From Scyliorhinus canicula (lineage: Eukaryota), in the NCBI RefSeq assembly GCF_902713615.1, contig NC_052149.1, positions 239,108,823 through 239,172,822 of the forward strand: DNA of 64,000 nt, read 5' to 3'. This document shows, in pieces, positions 9,036 to 63,254 of this stretch (within the stretch, counting starts at the first letter, position 1; each line of letters begins with the position of its first letter). The translations under genes were made by a program, and so were the position numbers. A model generated the notes under the pieces. It saw only the letters and a list, made by a program, of their open reading frames with translations, was not told where the DNA came from and did not search any database.

Positions 9036-9399
9036 CCATGATTAAGGGAGGGAAATCAGAATTTTTAAAAATGGACAGCAGGAAGTGTGGAAATCAGGGT
9101 AGTTTAAATTGACCTCCTTCCTGACTGTAACAAGTACCTTCAAAGTTTACTGAAGATATAAGTTATTTTTGTTGTATTGCTGAATCTGTGCTGCTTTTCA
9201 TCCAAGACCAATAAATCCATCCTGAGGTTCAGTGAGTTGTAATCAGCGATTTCTACAACTGGAACATAACTATCACCCCTTGATAAAACATTCCATTCAC
9301 TTTTTAAATTATTTTTTGGACCAGTTGACTGGTTTTACTCTGGCCCCTCGTGGTCAGGTTCGATTGCATCCTCATGTTTCTCAAATAAGGATATTTTTA

Positions 9400-9640
9400 T
9401 TCTTTAAAAGTTAACCCATATTTCTGAACCTCTTGTCAGTTCGTCCCTGCAGATCTGTTTTTCATGTTGCCCTCATTCCAACGGCGTCAACAATTTTAAG
9501 GTTGTTTAAGATTTTTCCATTGCAAAGTCAATGTGGTCGATGACATTGTCCACACTTTATTACTGCTTCTCGCACTAGATCAAATAAATCAGGTGACAGT
9601 GTGTATCCTGTCTCACCCTGACTGTTGATCTTAAAACATT
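9400..9640 (-). mobile_element. Ancient RTE-like RT fragment
   Basis: Frameshifted (V)RQ/GYTLSPDLFDLVREAVI resembles the RT motif GVRQGxxLSPxLF. Confidence 0.5.
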
Positions 9641-9779
9641 CTGTTAGTTTGCCCATCCACTCTCACACCTTTCAGGGATTTGTTATCGATATTTTCTGTC
9701 AGTCTGACACGTTTTGCAGGATTATCACACATCCCCAGCTCAAGTCGTGTCTGTCTTTGCCACCCAATGTCAGATGCCA

Positions 9780-9962
9780 GGGGCTGTTTAACAAACTGGG
9801 CTAAATCACTGGCTTTGAAAGCAGACCAAGGCAGGCCAGCAGCACGGTTCAATTCCTGTAACAGCCTCCCCGAACAGGCGCCGGAATGTGGCGACTAGGG
9901 GCTTTTCACAGTAACTTCATTGAAGCCTACTCGTGACAATAAATGATTTTCATTTCATTTCA
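9780..9962 (+). mobile_element. Short (~180 bp) tRNA-derived SINE with (CATTT)n tail; copies at 30848-31025, 36400-36573, 49165-49337, and minus fragments at 8186-8303 and 15171-15237
   Basis: Shared sequence aaagcagaccaaggcaggccagcagcacggttcaattcc...ccgaacaggcgccggaatgtggcgactaggggcttttcacagtaacttcatt. Confidence 0.9.
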
Positions 9963-10729
9963 ATTATAAGAAGTCGTTGTAACGATAGCCGCTACGTTCC
10001 ATAAATTTCTCTGAACTCCGTCTTATTCTGAACCTAGAATTAAGGCCTGGTCTTAAACTAACCTATTCTTTGTGCAGTACCATCTTTTAATTCCCTTGCA
10101 ACCCTCAGAGATAATTGTGAAAGATTCCACAGCACTATTCAAAAAAGAGCAGGGAATTTCTTCTTGGCCAAAATTCCCATTGCAGATTATCTGTTGATTA
10201 TCGCATTGTAACTCATGGGATCCTGTGGTGTACAAATTGGCTGCTGTGTGTTATTTAACTTTACAACAGTGACCCCACTTCCATAGCACTGAATTGGTTG
10301 TAAAATATTCTGGAACATTCTGAGATAATGAAAGGTGCCACATAAATGGGAATCCTTCCTCTCCTTGTGCAAGTCTTTTTAGTAAGTTGCAATTGTCTGT
10401 AATTGTTACATCTGTTCTCAGCTCCTTTATGAAGATTTGTGTTTTCATCGCCATCGCTAAGCCTTTAGATATAATGCAGCGGATTTCACTGGAAGCAGTG
10501 AAGGGGCGGTGTTTATTGCTGACTGTGTTGAGAATTGTGAACATCCCCAGCGCATTAACTGCAGCAAAAATGTCAACTTTTGGCTACAAAACGGCCAACC
10601 GACAAAGGAATCGGTGAGGCTTTGCATGAGTCATGTTCTGAGAGAGGCCATAGCTCCTGATAACCTCACAAGCTGAAATCATGCTCAGTGAGGTCAATAT
10701 TCGCTCAAAGACAGGTAAATCTCTTTATC

Positions 10730-12999: not shown

Positions 13000-13133
13000 N
13001 NNNNNNNNNNNNNNNNNNNNNNNNNNNNNNNNNNNNNNNNNNNNNNNNNNNNNNNNNNNNNNNNNNNNNNNNNNNNNNNNNNNNNNNNNNNNNNNNNNNN
13101 NNNNNNNNNNNNNNNNNNNNNNNNNNNNNNNNN
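13000..13133. other. Assembly gap (134 N)
   Basis: Run of N. Confidence 1.
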
Positions 13134-53639: not shown

Positions 53640-54575
53640 GGAGATTGAAGTAGTTGATTTGGAGATGAGTGGTGCTGAATCTTAATAAAGGGAACTATGA
53701 AGATTTGAGGTGTGAGTTGGCCTTGATTGATTGGGGAGAGTTACTGAAAGGGATGACAGTGAATAGACAATGGCAGACATTCAAGGAATGCATGGGGGAA
53801 CTGCAGCAACTGTTCATTCCTTTCTGGCAGAAAAGCAAAGGGGGTAAGTGGATCAATCCATGACTTACAAAGAAAATTAGAAATAGTATCCAATCCAAGG
53901 AAGAAACATACAGATTTTCCAAGAAAAATAATTGGTCTGAGGATTGGGAGCAGTTTAGCATTCAGCAAAGAAGGACAAAGGGATTGATTAAGAAGGGGAA
54001 AGTACAGTACGAAAGGAAGCTTGCAAGGAACATAAAGACTGACACTAAGAGTTTGTATAGATATGTGACGAAAAAGAGATTGGTTGAGAGAAATGTCAGC
54101 CCCCTACAGACAGAAACAGGGAAATGAGTAAGAAGGGACAAAGAAATGGCTGAGCAATTGAATACAATTTGGTTCTGTCTTCATAAAAGAGGACACAAAT
54201 CAGACACCAAAAATGATGGAAAATGAAAGGATTAGTGAGAGGGAAGAACTGAGGGAGATCAACATGGCTGAGGAACTGAACAGGTTTTTTGGGTCAGTCT
54301 TCACAGTGGAAGACACAAATAACATGCCAGTGACTGATGACAGGTGAGGACCTTGAGAGGATTGTTATCACTAAGGAGGTAATGATGGGCAAGCTAATGG
54401 GGCTAAAGGTAGACAAGTCTCCTGGCCCTGATGGAATGCATCCCAGGGTACTAAAAGAAATTGCTATGGAAATTGCAAATGCACTCGTGATAATTTACCA
54501 AAATTCACGCGACTCTGGGGTGGTTCCGCCGGATTGGAAATTAGCAAACATGACACCACTGTTTAAAAAAGGTCT
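53640..54575 (+). mobile_element. CR1 ORF2 fragment (APE-RT linker and start of RT)
   Basis: LNLNKGNYEDLRCELALIDW, KSPGPDGMHPRVLKE, PPDWKLANMTPLFKKG. Confidence 0.85.
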
Positions 54576-54899
54576 GTTAAAAAAAGGCTTCTTGATACAA
54601 CCCACAGCTTTTTGCACAGACAATGGAATGCTCGGTACTGATCACTGAAAGGTCATTTATTCAGGTACATTGTGATTACTTCTTGGTTCTTGATCATTAA
54701 AAATTTAAGTTGTATAAAATGAAACCACCATATGAAAAACCATTTGTTTCCAACTATATTCTTACCAGCTTTGAAAGCAACTGGAAATAATAAGCCAAGA
54801 CGTGATAAAGAGATTAAAGTTTGACCCATTGGCCTGATTTTCAAAGTGTGATTAAGTCACGCAGGTGATTTAATTTTTGAATGCAGGAGGTGCACTTAG

Positions 54900-57800
54900 T
54901 GTCAAACCGGTGGCATTTAGCACCTCCAGGAGCCCGCAGCAAAAGCAGGTGGCAGCCATATTGGAGACTGCAGCTGGCTTGCTAGTTTGAGCAGCAGTGA
55001 GGAAAATAAAAGTAGTTTAAGGGATTTGCATTTGTTTTGGTAAACATTAGAAATAAGGCACAGTTTCAAGAGGGTTTAATTTAATGTTTCTGAGCCTGGA
55101 AGAATAAAGGCTGTAGTTGGATTCATGCTGGACAAAGGTGTCTGTATATGTGGGGGTCGGTTAAGTTCCTGCTGTGTTTCCATGGTGCTTACCTTTTCAG
55201 TGGCAGCGGCAGAGTTCAGACCTGGGAAGAGAACCCAAGGCTCAGGGGAGTACAAAAGGCAGGTAAGGTAAGGCCAAATTCACTTACCAATCGGCAGGGT
55301 AAAAGTACGGAGGCATTCTGAGTTCACAGTTCAGAAAGTGACATGGGACCAACGAGAGCAGATGATTGGTGAGTAAGTCCTGGTGGGTATTTTAAAATTA
55401 TATTAAATTGTAAGTCATTATTTAAGCAAGAGCAGTGATTATTTGAATTATTTTATTTTTTTAAAGAAGGGTTTAAATTTGAAGGTTTTAGACATGGCAG
55501 GAGAAATCAAAGCCTTAGTATGCTCCTCCTGCTCTATGTGGGAAACTGGACACATTTCCAGTGCCCAGGGACCTTCATATGTGCAGGAAGGATGTCCAGC
55601 TGCAGTTTCTGAAAGCTCAGGTTTCAGAGCAAGAATGGCGGCTGGGGGAGCTGTGTAGCATCTGTGAGGCTCAGAGCATCATGGATAGCACTCGAGGAGT
55701 GCAGACAGAGCCAAGCCGCTGACACCACAAGAAGCCAGGTCCATATAGGAGGCTGAACAAGAGCAAGAGCATTCGTAATGGGAAATTCTATTGTCAGGGA
55801 AACAGAGAGGCGCTACTGTGCCCATCAAGGTGACTCGAGGGTGGTGTGTTGCCTCTCTGGTGCCAGGGTCCAGGATGTCGCTGAATGGCTGCAAGGCAGC
55901 AGTAAGGGGGAGGGTGACAAGGCAGGTGTCATGCTACATGTTGGTAGCAATGACATCGGTAGAAAGAGGGATGAGGTCTTGCATCAAGGATTCAGGGAGC
56001 TCGGCAGTCAAGTAGATAGCAAGACATCTGGTACTGTAATCTCTGGATTACTCCAAGAGCCAAATGCTAGCGAGAACAGAAATAGGAGAATAACGCAGAT
56101 GAATGGTTTAAGAGTTGGTTCCAGAGGGAGGGTTTTAGATTCCTGGGACCATTTCTGAGGAAGCTGGAATGTGCACAAATGAGACCGTCTATTTGCTAGT
56201 GCTGTTGGGAGGAGTTTAAACCAATTCGGCTGGGGAAGAGGGACACTTACTGTTAGCGCAATAGCGACATAGAATAACACATTTTAAGCAATCAAGTCAG
56301 AGGGAATACAGCAGTATAAAGTTTCAAGGGAGTAAGTCCAGGCTGAATGGCCTCCACTTTAATGGCAGGCATATTATGGGTAAAATGGATGAGTTAAAGG
56401 TGTGGGTGGACACGTGGAATTGTGACATAGCAGCCATCACAGAGACATAGTTGAAGGAGGGGCAGGATTGGCAGTTCAACAATCTGGAATCTTCTGGCGA
56501 GACACGGGAGGGAGTAAAAGAGGGGGCGGCATTGCATTATTAGTTAAGGAGTCAGTTACTGCAGCAGCGATAGATGATATATTAGAGGGGCATCAAATGA
56601 AGCATCGTAGGTAGGGCTTAGGAATAAAAAAGGGACATCCACATTGCTTATTATAGATGCCCAGATAGTCAGCGGGAAATTGAGGAGCAAATATGTGCAC
56701 AATTCACAGAGGTATGTAAAAATAATAACAATCGGGTAATTGTACTAGGTGATTTCAACTTTCCTAACATTAATTGGAATAGTCTTGGTGTGAAGGGCTC
56801 AGGTGGAATCGATTTCTTAAAATATACGCAGGAGAATTTTTTTGGTCAATATATAGAGATCCAATAGGGATAGAGCAGTGCTGGACCTAATTCTGGGGAA
56901 CGAAGCTTGACGGGTGGTTGAGGGGATGGTGGGGAGCATTTTAGTGATAGTGACCACAGCTTGTTATGGACAAAGAAATTGACAAGTTGCAAAGAAAAAA
57001 GTTTTGGATTGGGGGAGAGCAGTAAAATAGTAAAATAAGGCCGGATCTGGCCAAGGTACGCTGGGAACAGTCACTTGTGGGGAAATCTGCAGAAGAGCAG
57101 TGGGGAGCATTCAAAAAGGAAATGGGGAGGGTGCAGGCCCAACCTGTCCCCTCGCGGGTGAAAGGAAGGAGCAACAAAGCCCAGAGATATTCAGGGTAAG
57201 ATGAAAAGGAAAAAGAGAGGCTTTTAGCGAGCACAAGGTGAGCAAAACATTAGAGGCATTCGTGGAGTACAGAAAGGGCAGGGTGGAGCTTAAGAAAGCA
57301 ATTAAAAGAGCAAAGAGAGGGCATGAGAAAGCTCTGGCTGGTAAAAGTAGGGAAAATCCCAAGTTATTCTATCAGTGTATCAATGGGAAGAGGATAACCA
57401 GGAAAAGAGTTGGGGCCATTAGGGACCAATGGGGAAAGCTGTGGGTGGAGCCAGAGGACATTGGTAGGGTGTTGAACAAATACTTCACATGTCTTCACCC
57501 AAGAGATTGAGGAGGTAAATATGGAACTCAAGGAGTGAGGCTATGATATTTTTGAGCAAATTGACACAGGGAGTGACAAGGTATTACATAGAAGATCCAG
57601 TGCAGAAGGGGCCCATCAAGTCTGCACCGACCCACTTAAGCCCTCACTTTCACCTCATCCCAAAAACCCAATAACCCCTCCTGACCTTTTTGGTCAATCA
57701 GGGCAATTTATCCTGGCCAATCCACCTAACCTGCACATCTTTGGACTGTGGGAGGAAACTGGAGCACCCGGAGGAAACCCACGCAGACACGGGGAGAACA

Positions 57801-59238
57801 TGCAGACTCCGCACAGACAGTGACTCAGCGGGAAAATCGAACCTGGGACCCTGGCGCTGTGAATCCACAGTGCTATCCACTTGTGCTACCGTGCTGCCCC
57901 TTGGAGGGGTTGGCAGGCTTAAAAGTGGATAGGTCTCCAGATCCAGATGAATTGTGTTCCGGGTGCTGTGGGAAGCGAAGGAAATGATTGCAGGGGCTAT
58001 AACCCAATTTTTTTATTCCAATCTGGCCACGAGGTAGGTGCCAGAGGACTGGAGAACACTAGTATGGTTCCACTGCTTAAGAAGTGTTGTTGAAATAAGC
58101 CAGGGAACTATAGACCAGTGAGTCTCACTTCAGGGTTAGGAAAACTATTGGAAACAATTCTGAAGGAGAGATTCTACCCCGACTTGGAGAAGCAAGGTTT
58201 GATCAAGTCAGCATGGCTTTGTCAGAGGGAGGTTATGCCGAACAAAATTGTTTTCATTTTTTGAGAAGGTCACCAGGTGTGTAGATAAGGGTAGTTCAGT
58301 TGATGTTATTTATATAGAAAAATGCACATGGGATACAGGATAATTTGATTAGGTGGATTCAAAATTGTCTTAGTTGTAGAAAACAGAGAATGATGACAGA
58401 TGGCTGCTTTAGTGACTAGAAGCCAGTGATGTACCACAGGGATCTGTGCTGTGCCCCCTATTATTTGTCATTCATATAAACACCATAGATGATTATGTGT
58501 GGGGTAGAATCAATAAGCTTGGGGATTACACAAAGATTGGCTGGGTGATTAATAGTGAGGTTGAGTGTCTTGGGGTACAGATGGTGAAATGGACAGATAA
58601 GTGGCATATGGAATTTAACCATGAAAAGTGTGAGGTGATACACTTTGGAAGGAGTAATTTGACAAGGAAGTATTCAATGAAATGCATGACACTAGTAATT
58701 TCTGAGGAACAAAGGGACCTTGGCGTGTTTGCCCATAGATCTCTGAAGAGGGGATGGCTGTTTAATAGAGTGGTGAAAAAGTCATATGGGACACTTTCCT
58801 TTATCAATCGGAGAAAAGATTACAAAATCTGGGAAGTCATGTTGGACTTGTGTAGAACTTTGATGAGGCTACAGCTGGAATACTGTGCGCATCTCTGGTC
58901 ACCACATTATAGTAAGGATGTGCTTGCACTGGAGGGGGTGCAGAGGAGATTCACCACAATTTTGCTTTAGATTGAACACTTAAGCTATGAAGAGAGGTTG
59001 GATAGGCTTGGATTGAATTCGCTGGAGCAGAGAAGACTGAGGAGCGACCTGATTGAGGTGTACAGGGTTATGAGGGGCAGGGACAGGGTCGATAGGGAGC
59101 AGCTATTCCCCTTCGTTGAAGAGTCAGTTACGAGGAGACCAAGATTCAAGGTGAGGGGAAGGAGGTTTAAGGGGGATATTTTTTACCCAGAGGGTGGTGA
59201 TAGTCTGGAATGCACTGCCTGGGAGGATAGTAGAGGCC
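54900..59238 (+). mobile_element. Near full-length degenerate CR1 LINE (ORF1 zinc finger and SGNH esterase; ORF2 APE-RT)
   Basis: LVCSSCSMWE near 55515. Esterase-like GNSIVR...CCLSGARVQDV...HVGSNDIG at 55778-56158. APE motifs (ITET, GDFNFPNINW) at 56330-56950. RT and thumb motifs (LCPLLFVIHIN, LEYCAHLWSPHY, RRLRSDLIEVY). Many stops and frameshifts. Split by a HE1 SINE. Confidence 0.9.
57587..57900 (-). mobile_element. HE1-type SINE nested in CR1
   Basis: Core on the minus strand. It interrupts ORF2. Confidence 0.9.
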
Positions 59239-60371: not shown

Positions 60372-60713
60372 ACAATAGAACACCTACAGTGCAGAAGGAG
60401 GCCATTCGGCCTGCCGAGTCTGTACTGACCCTCTGAAAGAGCACTCTGCCGAGGCCCACTCCCCCGCCTTTTCCCAGTAACCCCATAACGCCGCCTAACT
60501 TGCATATCTTTGTACACTAAGGGGAAATTTAGCATGGCCAATCCACCTAACCTGCACATCTTTGGGCTGAGAGAGGAAACCGGAGCACCCGGAGGAAACC
60601 CACGCAGACACGGGGAGAAAGTGCAATCTCCACACAGTCACCCGAGACCGGAGTCGAACCAGAGTCCCTGGCGCTGTGAGACAGCAGGGCTAACCACTGT
60701 GCCACCGTGCTGC
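60372..60713 (-). mobile_element. HE1-type SINE
   Basis: Core on the minus strand. Confidence 0.9.
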
Positions 60714-61020
60714 CTGTTCAGTTTTCCGCAAAGACAGATGAACTTCCGACAATTAATCCAACGATTGGGCAGTAGCATGTTTAAATCCTTCCATGTGATT
60801 TGGTCATCATTGGCTAGGCCAGCATCTGTTGGCTATCCCTAATCGCTCTTGAGAAGGTGTTGGTGAGCCGCCATCTTGAACCGCTTGGGCCGGTATATGT
60901 AAAGTTCTTTTGGGAAGGGAGTTTTCGTATTTTGATCCATGGACCAGAATGTCTAGATCATTTTACCTCGCATTCACAACTGCCCAGGTCGGTTAAAAAG
61001 CTCCTTAACAAGCAGAGTGG

Positions 61021-62821
61021 GGACTTCCGGTGACGGCGGGCGGGAGGCAGCCGCGCATTGGAAGGGTCCCGTTCGGGAACGGCATTTTCGGGGTTTAACA
61101 CCCGGTTCCAGGGGCAACGGAGGCGGCAAAAGCAGGGAGTAGGCACAGCGAAGGGAAATATTGAAAACAAGTAAAATAAACAGCCTTGAAAAAAGCAACT
61201 GGAAGTCCGTCGGGGAGTGGAAAGGTCACCGCGGGGACGGCAAGAAAAGTGGAGGCTGGGGCACCGGGGAGGCCGCATTGCTCACGGCTGAAGAAATGAC
61301 GAAGGTGATAGCTGAGGAACTCGAAAGGCAGTTCACAAAACACATGGAGGCGATGAGGAAGGAGATGGGGCGGTATTGAAAGTGCTGGTGGAGGAGGCGA
61401 TTGCCCCGGTGAGGGCGGCGGTATTGAGCGCAGTGGCGGAGGTGTGGGAGCAAGGTGAGGTGCTGAAGGAAGTGGAAGAGACATTATCGCAGCTCAGTGA
61501 TCCACTCACCTCGATGGGGAAGGAGATGCAGAAGGTGACAGAGATTAACAAGGACCTGCGAGCCAAAATGGATGACTTGGAAAACAGATCCAGGCGACAG
61601 AATCTGAGGATTGTGGGTCTGCCCAAAGAGTGGAAGGCCCGAGGCCGACTGAGTATTTTGCCGCGTTGTTGGCGAACCTATTGGGGAGAGGAATGATCCC
61701 TCCCATATGAACTGGATCGGGCTCATCGGTCGTGGAGGCCTGTACCAAAGGAGAGTGAGCCGCCAAGAGTAGTGAATCTGTGTTTTCGTAGGTACAGTTT
61801 GAAGGAGAAGGTCCTGTGCTGGGCAAAGCAGAAGTGGGTGGTGCAGTGGGCTGGAGCTGGTATACGCATATATCAGGACTTTACGGTGGAGCTGGCAAGG
61901 AGGCGGGCTGCCTTCAGCTGGGTGAAGAAGGCACTGTACAACAGCAAGGTGCAGTGTGGAATAGTATATCCAGCTAAGTTGAGGGTGACCTACAAATCCA
62001 AAGACTTTTATTTCGGGATGGCGGAAGCAGCGGAGGAGTTTGCGAAGGCAGAAGGACTGTGGCTGAATTGAAAAATGGTCATATGCCGATGTAACCTTCA
62101 TGTAACTGTATTTTTTCACTGCGTGCTGGTGTATGTACTAAATGAGCCAACCTTGTATATACTTGGACAAGGGAAGAGATGGGACTTCCACTTGCAATGA
62201 TGGTTCTTTGGGGTTTGGGTGTGTATGCGGGGTTGCGTGCTAAAGGGGATTTCTTGGTTTTCCTGGGACCGGGCAAAGGGGAAGGAGACCTGGTCGGGGG
62301 CCTCCATGCTGGCCAGTTTAAGGCGGCCAGTGAACGGGAGTGAGGTGGGGGGAGGGGCTGCGGCCCCGGCAGAACAGGTTCCGATGAATCTAGCCGGGGT
62401 GGAAAGTTGGGGGGAAGGAACAGAGGTTAGAGGGAGGAGTTTTGTCAGAGGAAGTGGAGGGGAGGAGTCGGGGAGGGGGTGGTTCCAATTCATGGGTGTC
62501 ATTTACGGTACTCTTTTGGGGATTGGATGGCATCGAATGTTAGGGGGAGGGGTGGGGGGGTGGACTCTATAGGTCAATGGTGACCTTAGGCCATTCCTGA
62601 TTCCGTTTTCTTTTTTTTCCTTTGTTTGTCCCACCGTGGGAGGGTTTGTTTTATTTGATGCTTATATTGTCAGGTGGGCCGTTGTTTGGGGTGGTGAGAG
62701 GATGGGATCGTTGTTGTTGATAAGGGGGTTGACTTTGTATTTGTTACCGTTTACTGCGTGTTGGCGGGGTGTAAATTCTGAAGAAAATGTGAAAATGGAG
62801 AATAAAAATATTTTACAAAAA
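61021..62821 (+). mobile_element. L1-clade non-LTR element with ORF1 only (HAL1-like or internally deleted L1)
   Basis: 5' end GGACTTCCGG. Frameshifted L1 ORF1 at 61161-62071 (coiled coil, DDLENRSRRQNLRIVGLP, IRIYQDFT, YPAKLRVTY). About 750 bp G-rich tail, AATAAA at 62801 and a short A tail. TSD AC[A/G]AGCAGAGTGG at 61008-61020 and 62823-62835. Confidence 0.85.
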
Positions 62822-62914
62822 TACGAGCAGAGTGGGCTGTTAATTGGTGGCAAGCTGGTTGGGGGTGGGTAGGTGGGTGGGGTGGTGGATTTATGAAGAG
62901 AATTTTGGAGCATA

Positions 62915-63254
62915 GGAGCGTCACGGTAGCACAGTGATTAGCACTGTTGCTTCACAGCTCCGGCGTCCCAGGTTCGATTCCCTGCTGGGTCACTCTCTGT
63001 GCGGAGTCTGCACGTTCTCCCCGTGTCTGCGTGGCTTTCCTCCGGGTGCTCCGGTTTCCTCCCGCAGTCCAAAGATGTGCTGGTCTGGTGAATTGGCTGC
63101 GCTAAATGTCCCCTCAGTGTCCAAAAAGGTTAGGTGAGGTTGGGTTACGGGGATAGGGTGGAGGGGTGGGCTGAAGTAGGGTGCTCTATCCAAGGGCCAG
63201 TGCAGATTCGATGGGCTGAATGGCCTCCTTCTGCACTGTAAATTCTATGACTCT
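62915..63254 (+). mobile_element. HE1-type SINE
   Basis: Core and tail present. Confidence 0.9.

What the first reader, a model, noticed from the sequence alone, without database searches (positions are those of the whole stretch)
61008..62835. ORF1-only L1 element bounded by a TSD: possible shark HAL1-like family
Seen: an L1-type 5' end, a complete but frameshifted ORF1, about 750 bp of G-rich sequence in which I see no endonuclease or RT motif, AATAAA, an A tail and a 13-bp TSD with one mismatch, all within 1.8 kb. Established: 'half-L1' (HAL1) elements encoding only ORF1p are described in mammals. Inference: this may be an independently evolved non-autonomous ORF1-only family in cartilaginous fish.
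Basis: partly seen in the sequence, partly recalled or inferred. Interest (0 to 1): 0.7.

Follow-up and report, generated by a model that had tools for sequence, protein, structure and literature searches.

The report
Dead ORF1-only L1 retroposon copy
This is a decayed 1.8-kb jumping-gene copy in a shark genome that keeps the RNA-binding gene (ORF1) of an L1 element and has no copying-enzyme gene (ORF2). It resembles the mammalian "half-L1" parasites of L1, but whether it belongs to a repeated family could not be tested here.

Summary
A 1,801-nt unit (61022-62822, + strand) lies between two copies of a 14-nt target-site duplication that match at 13 of 14 positions. These are the only two matches in 64 kb, where 0.01 is expected by chance.

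The unit has three parts:
- **5' UTR:** 227 nt, CpG-rich.
- **ORF1:** complete in extent but broken. It is homologous to L1 ORF1p and 61-75% identical to three Scyliorhinus torazame proteins.
- **Tail:** 751 nt, G-rich. I found no endonuclease or reverse-transcriptase similarity in it. It ends in AATAAA and a short A-rich stretch.

Six loci that carry more distant ORF1 relatives (about 38-46% identical where measured) all have ORF2 544-707 nt after ORF1. ORF2 is therefore truly missing here.

I could not run the decisive test, which asks whether other copies share the same ORF1-to-tail junction, each with its own duplication. The scan has noted this structure before on other DNA of the same genome: at least 14 notes, seven of them 1,824-1,873 nt long, and two followed up as a small multi-copy family. 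Those notes are leads, not my evidence.

Best reading (0.68): a dead copy of a HAL1-like, ORF1-only L1 derivative that was mobilised in trans. It is a known kind of element in a new lineage, of modest interest.

The parts
61008..61021 (.). 5' copy of the target-site duplication (ACAAGCAGAGTGGG)
   Evidence: Matches 62823-62836 at 13 of 14 positions. These are the only two matches in the window; 0.01 is expected by chance.
61022..61248 (+). 5' untranslated leader, 227 nt, CpG-rich. It starts GACTTCCGG, which contains an ETS-like ACTTCCGG motif. Presumed internal promoter.
   Evidence: It lies between the TSD and the codon aligned to the start Met of the S. torazame ORF1 proteins. CpG o/e is 1.12 against 0.50 for the window. 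The promoter role is inferred, not tested.
61249..62071 (+). L1-type ORF1, complete in extent but dead. The start position reads GTG. There are four frame breaks, near 61266-61270, 61366-61376, 61622-61627 and 61690-61705. The stop is TGA at 62069-62071.
   Evidence: Three-frame translation. tblastn and blastp give 75.5%, 64.6% and 61.5% identity to S. torazame P0152, P0003 and P0151. PDB L1 ORF1p hits at E 7e-5. 843 relatives.
61586..61624 (+). Conserved stretch RSRRQNLRIVGLP within ORF1. I take it, from my own knowledge, to mark the start of the ORF1p RNA-recognition domain.
   Evidence: Coordinates. The same stretch is seen in P0002, P0003, P0152 and P0007.
62072..62822 (+). Non-coding G-rich tail (3' UTR-like), 751 nt, with no ORF2.
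   Evidence: G 35.7%, C 13.8%. Pfam blank. ORF2 tblastn blank at E<=10 against the window. No tandem repeats. No Rfam family.
62801..62806 (+). Polyadenylation signal AATAAA, followed by a short interrupted A-rich end that runs to 62822.
   Evidence: and the sequence.
62823..62836 (.). 3' copy of the target-site duplication (ACGAGCAGAGTGGG)

Best explanation
This is a dead copy of a non-autonomous, ORF1-only derivative of a Scyliorhinus L1 lineage, a 'half-L1' or HAL1-like retroposon. The proposed life cycle is as follows. An RNA of about 1.8 kb is transcribed from a promoter in the CpG-rich 227-nt leader and polyadenylated after AATAAA at 62801. It encodes only ORF1p (coiled coil, RRM and C-terminal domain), which coats its own RNA. 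The endonuclease and reverse transcriptase (ORF2p) come in trans from autonomous L1s of the same genome. ORF2p nicks the target, primes on the A-rich 3' end and copies the whole RNA, which leaves a 14-bp target-site duplication.

Shown here: the whole unit lies between the two TSD copies; ORF1 is L1-type and complete in extent; ORF2 is absent; the loci of more distant relatives have ORF2.

Inferred: transcription from the leader, trans-mobilisation, and that the 1.8-kb form is the unit that was copied (family membership). This copy is itself inert: the start codon is lost and there are four frame breaks. The tail is about the length of the ORF1-ORF2 spacer of relatives (544-707 nt) plus a short 3' end, so the founder probably arose by clean loss of ORF2. 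This last point is inference.
For: - The TSD is statistically sound and encloses exactly leader + ORF1 + tail + AATAAA.
- ORF1 is homologous to L1 ORF1p (843 hits). It is complete from the aligned Met to the aligned C-terminus.
- The tail shows no ORF2 signal by Pfam or by tblastn with L1 ORF2 from L002 and L003. ORF1, which is the same age, is still easy to recognise, so an ORF2 remnant of that age should be visible too.
- The relatives' loci that I could inspect all have ORF1, then a 544-707 nt spacer, then an EN+RT ORF2.
- The ORF1 lineage is present at three loci of the sister species S. torazame.
- Leads only: at least 14 notes of this scan describe the same layout at other loci of this genome. 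Seven are 1,824-1,873 nt long, against 1,828 nt here. One note gives 'about 740 nt UTR'. Two follow-ups call it a small multi-copy family.
Against: - I saw no second copy myself. There is none in the 64-kb window, none in the protein collections from this species, and the by-sequence look-up was blank (which the operators say means nothing).
- A TSD-bounded unit would look the same after a single post-insertion deletion of ORF2.
- This copy is broken, so it gives no evidence that ORF1 is kept by selection.
- A weak match of tail 62591-62740 to ORF2 residues 835-885 of L003 (25.4 bits; 3 of 300 shuffles reach it) could be an ORF2 relic, though a 3-sequence profile does not support it.
Confidence: 0.68

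Rival explanations
1. A one-off event. A full-length L1 of this lineage inserted here, or was being copied here, and this single copy lost ORF2 by an internal deletion. There would then be no ORF1-only family.
For: Nothing I could run separates this from the family reading. The TSD would still bound the element. Relatives have a long ORF1-ORF2 spacer (544-707 nt), so a deletion from the spacer to the 3' UTR would leave exactly this layout. There is no second copy in the window.
Against: Both breakpoints would have to fall in non-coding sequence, so that no recognisable ORF2 codon remains. Notes of this scan report the same layout and nearly the same length at many other loci; I did not check these.
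Confidence: 0.15
2. A processed retrocopy of the mRNA of a host gene that was itself domesticated from L1 ORF1 (an L1TD1-like gene). L1 would have copied it like any processed pseudogene, so it would not be a self-propagating element.
For: The layout of leader, ORF, 3' UTR, AATAAA, A-rich end and TSD is also that of a processed pseudogene. In S. torazame, relatives are annotated as 'uncharacterized protein' gene models.
Against: The S. torazame models are truncated or spliced onto unrelated exons and differ by 20-40% from one another. That pattern suggests decayed repeats rather than one conserved gene. No intron-bearing parent gene is known.
Confidence: 0.08
3. A chimeric retrocopy. Reverse transcription began on an unrelated polyadenylated RNA (the tail) and switched template to an L1 RNA just after ORF1.
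For: The tail has no detectable similarity to ORF2 or to the spacers of relatives. Its composition changes at the ORF1 stop: GC drops to 0.44 and then rises to 0.62.
Against: No similarity to any other sequence could be shown either. A switch exactly after the ORF1 stop would be a coincidence. Spacer DNA is not expected to be conserved between L1s whose ORF1s are only about 40% identical.
Confidence: 0.05

Closest known systems
HAL1 (half-L1) elements of mammals (Smit 1999; Bao & Jurka 2010, as cited in PMC5753468)
   Same: A non-autonomous L1 derivative that encodes only ORF1p and is presumed to use L1 ORF2p in trans. PMC5753468 states that HAL1s arose independently several times. PMC4161310 lists HAL1 among elements likely mobilised by L1. 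This element has the same hallmarks: ORF1 only, AATAAA, an A-rich end and a TSD.
   Different: The lineage differs. The nearest ORF1 relatives are Scyliorhinus proteins (61-75%) and other non-mammalian L1s (49% or less), while human and mouse ORF1p match only at E about 1e-4. It would therefore be a separate origin in cartilaginous fish. My paper searches found no shark or fish HAL1. Repbase and Dfam could not be consulted.
ORF1-only telomeric Jockey-clade retrotransposons of Drosophila (HeT-A type)
   Same: LINE derivatives that keep the Gag-like ORF1, have lost ORF2 repeatedly, and depend on ORF2 proteins of other elements (PMC13534243).
   Different: They belong to a different LINE clade (Jockey, not L1), target telomeres and have a host-beneficial role. 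Nothing suggests targeting or benefit here.
L1TD1, a host gene domesticated from L1 ORF1 in mammals (PMC4161310)
   Same: An ORF1-derived coding sequence that persists without ORF2.
   Different: L1TD1 is a single conserved host gene. This locus is a TSD-bounded, frame-broken insertion.

Membership tests
L1-clade ORF1p (Transposase_22-type: coiled coil + RRM + CTD) | RRM and C-terminal domain homologous to L1 ORF1p | tested here: met
   phmmer of the 122-aa C-terminal piece against PDB finds 2ldy, 2ykp, 2yko and 2jrb (L1 ORF1p) at E 7e-5 to 4e-4, aligned over residues 18-108. There are 843 relatives at E<=1e-3. Several relatives found with P0003 carry PF02994.
L1-clade ORF1p (Transposase_22-type: coiled coil + RRM + CTD) | Direct Pfam PF02994 match of this copy | tested here: inconclusive
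   No PF02994 hit for any of the frame-separated pieces, even at E<=10. The pieces are short (26-122 aa) and diverged, so the HMM's silence is not decisive.
L1-clade ORF1p (Transposase_22-type: coiled coil + RRM + CTD) | N-terminal coiled coil | tested here: inconclusive
   The 81-aa piece at 61382-61624 gives only weak sub-threshold hits, several of them to families I know as coiled-coil proteins (DUF1664, SlyX, ATG16, YabA; E 0.003-0.04). No coiled-coil predictor was run.
HAL1-like (ORF1-only, non-autonomous L1 derivative) | ORF1 present, ORF2 (EN and RT) absent between the element's ends | tested here: met
   ORF1 spans 61249-62071. The 751-nt tail gives no Pfam, tblastn or PDB signal for EN or RT. 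One weak, unsupported match to a post-RT stretch is recorded.
HAL1-like (ORF1-only, non-autonomous L1 derivative) | L1-type insertion hallmarks: TSD, polyadenylation signal, A-rich 3' end | tested here: met
   14-nt TSD matching at 13 of 14 (expected 0.01). AATAAA at 62801. The A-rich end is short and interrupted.
HAL1-like (ORF1-only, non-autonomous L1 derivative) | Several copies share the same ORF1-to-tail junction, each with its own TSD | not testable with these tools
There is no second copy in the window. Only unchecked notes of the scan speak to this point.
HAL1-like (ORF1-only, non-autonomous L1 derivative) | An autonomous L1 partner in the same genome that supplies ORF2p | not tested
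   The window holds only CR1-like LINE remains. A note of the scan (s1-243575) reports a young 7.3-kb L1 elsewhere in this genome; I did not check it.
Mammalian HAL1 families (Repbase HAL1, HAL1B and others) by descent | ORF1 nested within mammalian L1/HAL1 lineages | tested here: not met
   The closest relatives are Scyliorhinus proteins (61-75%) and other non-mammalian sequences (49% or less). Human and mouse ORF1p match only at E about 1e-4. It is the same kind of element, not the same family.

The most novel reading that the evidence does not exclude
Catsharks carry their own HAL1-like family that arose independently. It would be an ORF1-only parasite of L1, shared by Scyliorhinus species, with master copies whose ORF1 is kept open by selection and which were active recently. 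That would make loss of ORF2 with retention of ORF1 a recurrent L1 strategy across jawed vertebrates, not a mammalian oddity. The 751-nt tail would be the parent L1's inter-ORF spacer joined to its 3' end.
Probability: 0.45. Interest if true: 0.5.

Novelty: new member of a known kind. Interest (0 to 1): 0.32.

Why it matters
In the papers I could consult, ORF1-only L1 derivatives (HAL1) are described from mammals, where they arose several times. A separate origin in cartilaginous fish would show that an RNA which brings its own ORF1p but borrows ORF2p is a recurrent, stable way to parasitise L1. It would also give a second, very distant system in which to ask why ORF1 is kept. This particular locus is a dead copy and adds one dated insertion to that picture. 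Its worth lies in the family, which the scan has already met at other loci.

Tried and rejected
- **Other copies in the window.** blastn of the element against the window finds only itself.
- **Word-index protein search.** The 122-aa piece found nothing, because the length filter of 67-213 aa hides full-length ORF1p.
- **Exhaustive protein search.** It found relatives, but none from this species.
- **S. torazame loci.** The same happened for ENA sample ERZ26222911.
- **Findings look-up by sequence.** Blank.
- **ORF2 relic in the tail.**
  - A single weak match to L003 ORF2 residues 835-885 scores 25.4 bits, and 3 of 300 shuffles reach it.
  - A 3-sequence HMM does not back it (-1.2 bits), nor does phmmer against PDB.
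  - I treat it as chance but record it.
- **Spacer similarity.** Spacer DNA of L002 and L003 against the tail gives only short chance matches.
- **G-quadruplex enrichment.** The tail has one canonical motif (62543-62560), no more than shuffles give (152 of 1000 shuffles reach it).
- **Other scans.** Rfam, TRF and the bacterial promoter/terminator scan show nothing relevant.
- **Literature.** I found no paper on shark or fish HAL1. Bao & Jurka 2010 is not held.
- **Not attempted.** The third word-index search and the metagenome and viral scans were not spent, because those collections showed no DNA or proteins from this species.

Full report
**What is there**

The stretch 61008-62836 holds a 1,801-nt insertion (61022-62822, + strand) between two copies of a 14-nt direct repeat. 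The repeat reads ACAAGCAGAGTGGG at 61008-61021 and ACGAGCAGAGTGGG at 62823-62836. A search of the whole 64-kb window on both strands with up to one mismatch finds only these two sites. Shuffles give 0.01 on average, and none of 100 gives two. The target-site duplication is therefore real.

**The coding part**

Three-frame translation, together with tblastn and blastp against the nearest relatives, shows one L1-type ORF1 from 61249 to the TGA at 62069-62071.

- It is complete in extent. Its first codon aligns with the start Met of the Scyliorhinus torazame proteins, but here it reads GTG. Its last residues align with the C-termini of P0001 and P0002.
- It is broken by four frame changes, near 61266-61270, 61366-61376, 61622-61627 and 61690-61705. 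I read the pieces separately and mended nothing.
- The 122-aa C-terminal piece matches solved human and mouse L1 ORF1p structures (2ldy, 2ykp, 2yko, 2jrb; E 7e-5 to 4e-4).
- An exhaustive HMMER search gives 843 relatives at E<=1e-3. Relatives found with P0003 are named 'L1 transposable element RRM domain-containing protein' or carry PF02994.
- Pfam itself is silent on the short pieces. This also shows that a blank Pfam result is weak evidence for sequence of this age.
- The best relatives are three 'uncharacterized protein' models of S. torazame: P0152 at 75.5%, P0003 at 64.6% and P0151 at 61.5% identity over the aligned pieces. They lie at three loci on two chromosomes. Everything else is 49% identical or less.

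**The non-coding parts**

- The leader, 61022-61248, is 227 nt. Its CpG o/e is 1.12, against 0.64 for ORF1, 0.59 for the tail and 0.50 for the window. It begins with an ETS-like ACTTCCGG. A promoter role is my inference.
- The tail, 62072-62822, is 751 nt, with G 35.7% and C 13.8% and a strong positive GC skew.
- The tail has no tandem repeats, no Rfam family and no Pfam hit on any stop-free segment of 42 aa or more in six frames.
- tblastn with two natural L1 ORF2 proteins taken from Logan loci L002 and L003 finds nothing in the tail at E<=10 against the window.
- AATAAA lies at 62801. It is followed by a short, interrupted A-rich end rather than a clean poly(A).
- ORF1 of the same insertion is still easy to recognise, so an ORF2 remnant of equal age should be visible. 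I conclude that ORF2 is absent, not decayed.
- One caveat remains. With very permissive settings, tail 62591-62740 aligns to ORF2 residues 835-885 of L003 (33% over 51 aa; 3 of 300 shuffles reach the score). That stretch corresponds to human ORF2p 829-880. A three-sequence profile (L002, L003, L004) scores -1.2 bits, and PDB phmmer finds nothing. I read the match as chance.

**What relatives look like**

At every locus of a non-Scyliorhinus ORF1 relative that I could inspect (ORF1 about 38-46% identical to this copy where measured), ORF1 is followed by ORF2 after a long spacer:

| Locus | ORF1-ORF2 spacer |
|---|---|
| ENA contig with P0002 (ORF2 of 1,275 aa, Exo_endo_phos + RVT_1) | 571 nt |
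| ENA contig with P0001 | 590 nt |
| ENA contig with P0169 | 567 nt |
| L002 | 544 nt |
| L003 | 707 nt |
| L004 | up to 696 nt |

The 751-nt tail is about one such spacer plus a short 3' end, which suggests a clean loss of ORF2 in the founder. Spacer DNA of L002 and L003 shows no similarity to the tail, as expected at this distance. The idea therefore remains inference.

**Family or one-off?**

This is the crux, and I could not test it.

- The window has no second copy.
- The protein collections hold no relative from this species.

A TSD-bounded unit looks the same whether the 1.8-kb RNA was the thing copied or a full-length insertion later lost ORF2.

The scan's own notes say that the same layout was seen at 14 or more places in this genome. 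Seven of these have lengths of 1,824-1,873 nt, against 1,828 nt here. One is described with 'about 740 nt UTR'. Two follow-ups conclude that it is a small multi-copy family in the small-spotted catshark that is also present in a sister species. Another note reports a young 7.3-kb L1 in this genome. These are unchecked AI notes. I confirmed only one point, that the ORF1 lineage exists in S. torazame. The notes raise my odds for the family reading, but they are not my evidence.

**Mechanism (best reading, 0.68)**

This is a dead copy of an ORF1-only L1 derivative. It would be transcribed from its leader and polyadenylated at 62801. Its RNA would be coated by its own ORF1p and copied into the genome by ORF2p borrowed from autonomous L1s, leaving the 14-bp duplication.

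Rivals:
- a one-off internal deletion (0.15);
- a processed retrocopy of a domesticated ORF1-derived host gene (0.08);
- a template-switch chimera (0.05).

**Comparison with what is known**

- Mammalian HAL1 is defined as a non-autonomous L1 derivative that encodes only ORF1p and arose independently several times (PMC5753468). It is thought to use the L1 machinery (PMC4161310).
- In Drosophila, ORF1-only telomeric Jockey elements lost ORF2 repeatedly and rely on other elements' ORF2p (PMC13534243).
- This element works like these but is not a member of the mammalian HAL1 families by descent.
- My paper searches found no shark or fish HAL1. Repbase and Dfam could not be consulted, and Bao & Jurka 2010 is not held.

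**Verdict**

This is a new member of a known kind, and the scan has already found it on other DNA of the same genome. This copy is inert, so interest is modest.

Noticed in passing
window 60385-60637 and 62997-63240: Two copies of one SINE-like repeat in inverted orientation bracket the element. The arms are 129 nt (86% complementary) and 99 nt (78% complementary), about 2.4-2.7 kb apart. ARAGORN finds no tRNA in them.
   Followed up: partly
window 54337-58970: Remains of a different LINE on the + strand, which I judge CR1-like from the residues alone. They comprise an ORF matching the RT region of L1 ORF2 (54337-54648; tblastn E 3e-6 to L002 ORF2), an ORF at 55778-56158 with a GSND motif that looks like an esterase-type ORF1, and a further RT-like ORF at 58446-58970. 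It is not an L1, so the window offers no L1 ORF2 source.
   Followed up: partly
window 62863-62888: A short (GGGT)n / GGGTGGGGAGGT microsatellite lies 27 nt 3' of the target-site duplication.
   Followed up: no
window 62591-62740: A stop-free stretch of the tail aligns weakly to a post-RT part of L1 ORF2 (L003 residues 835-885; 3 of 300 shuffles reach the score). A small profile and PDB phmmer do not support it.
   Followed up: yes
relatives: ENA ERZ26222911 contigs, L002, L003, L004: L1s related to this ORF1 consistently have an unusually long ORF1-ORF2 spacer of 544-707 nt.
   Followed up: partly
ENA ERZ26222911, 10.5-kb contig carrying P0002: A full L1 (ORF1 plus a 1,275-aa ORF2) shares a contig with OmpA/DUF4398-type gene calls at 9043-10349. 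This is an odd mix and the contig may be chimeric.
   Followed up: no
window 13000-13133: A run of 134 N.
   Followed up: no
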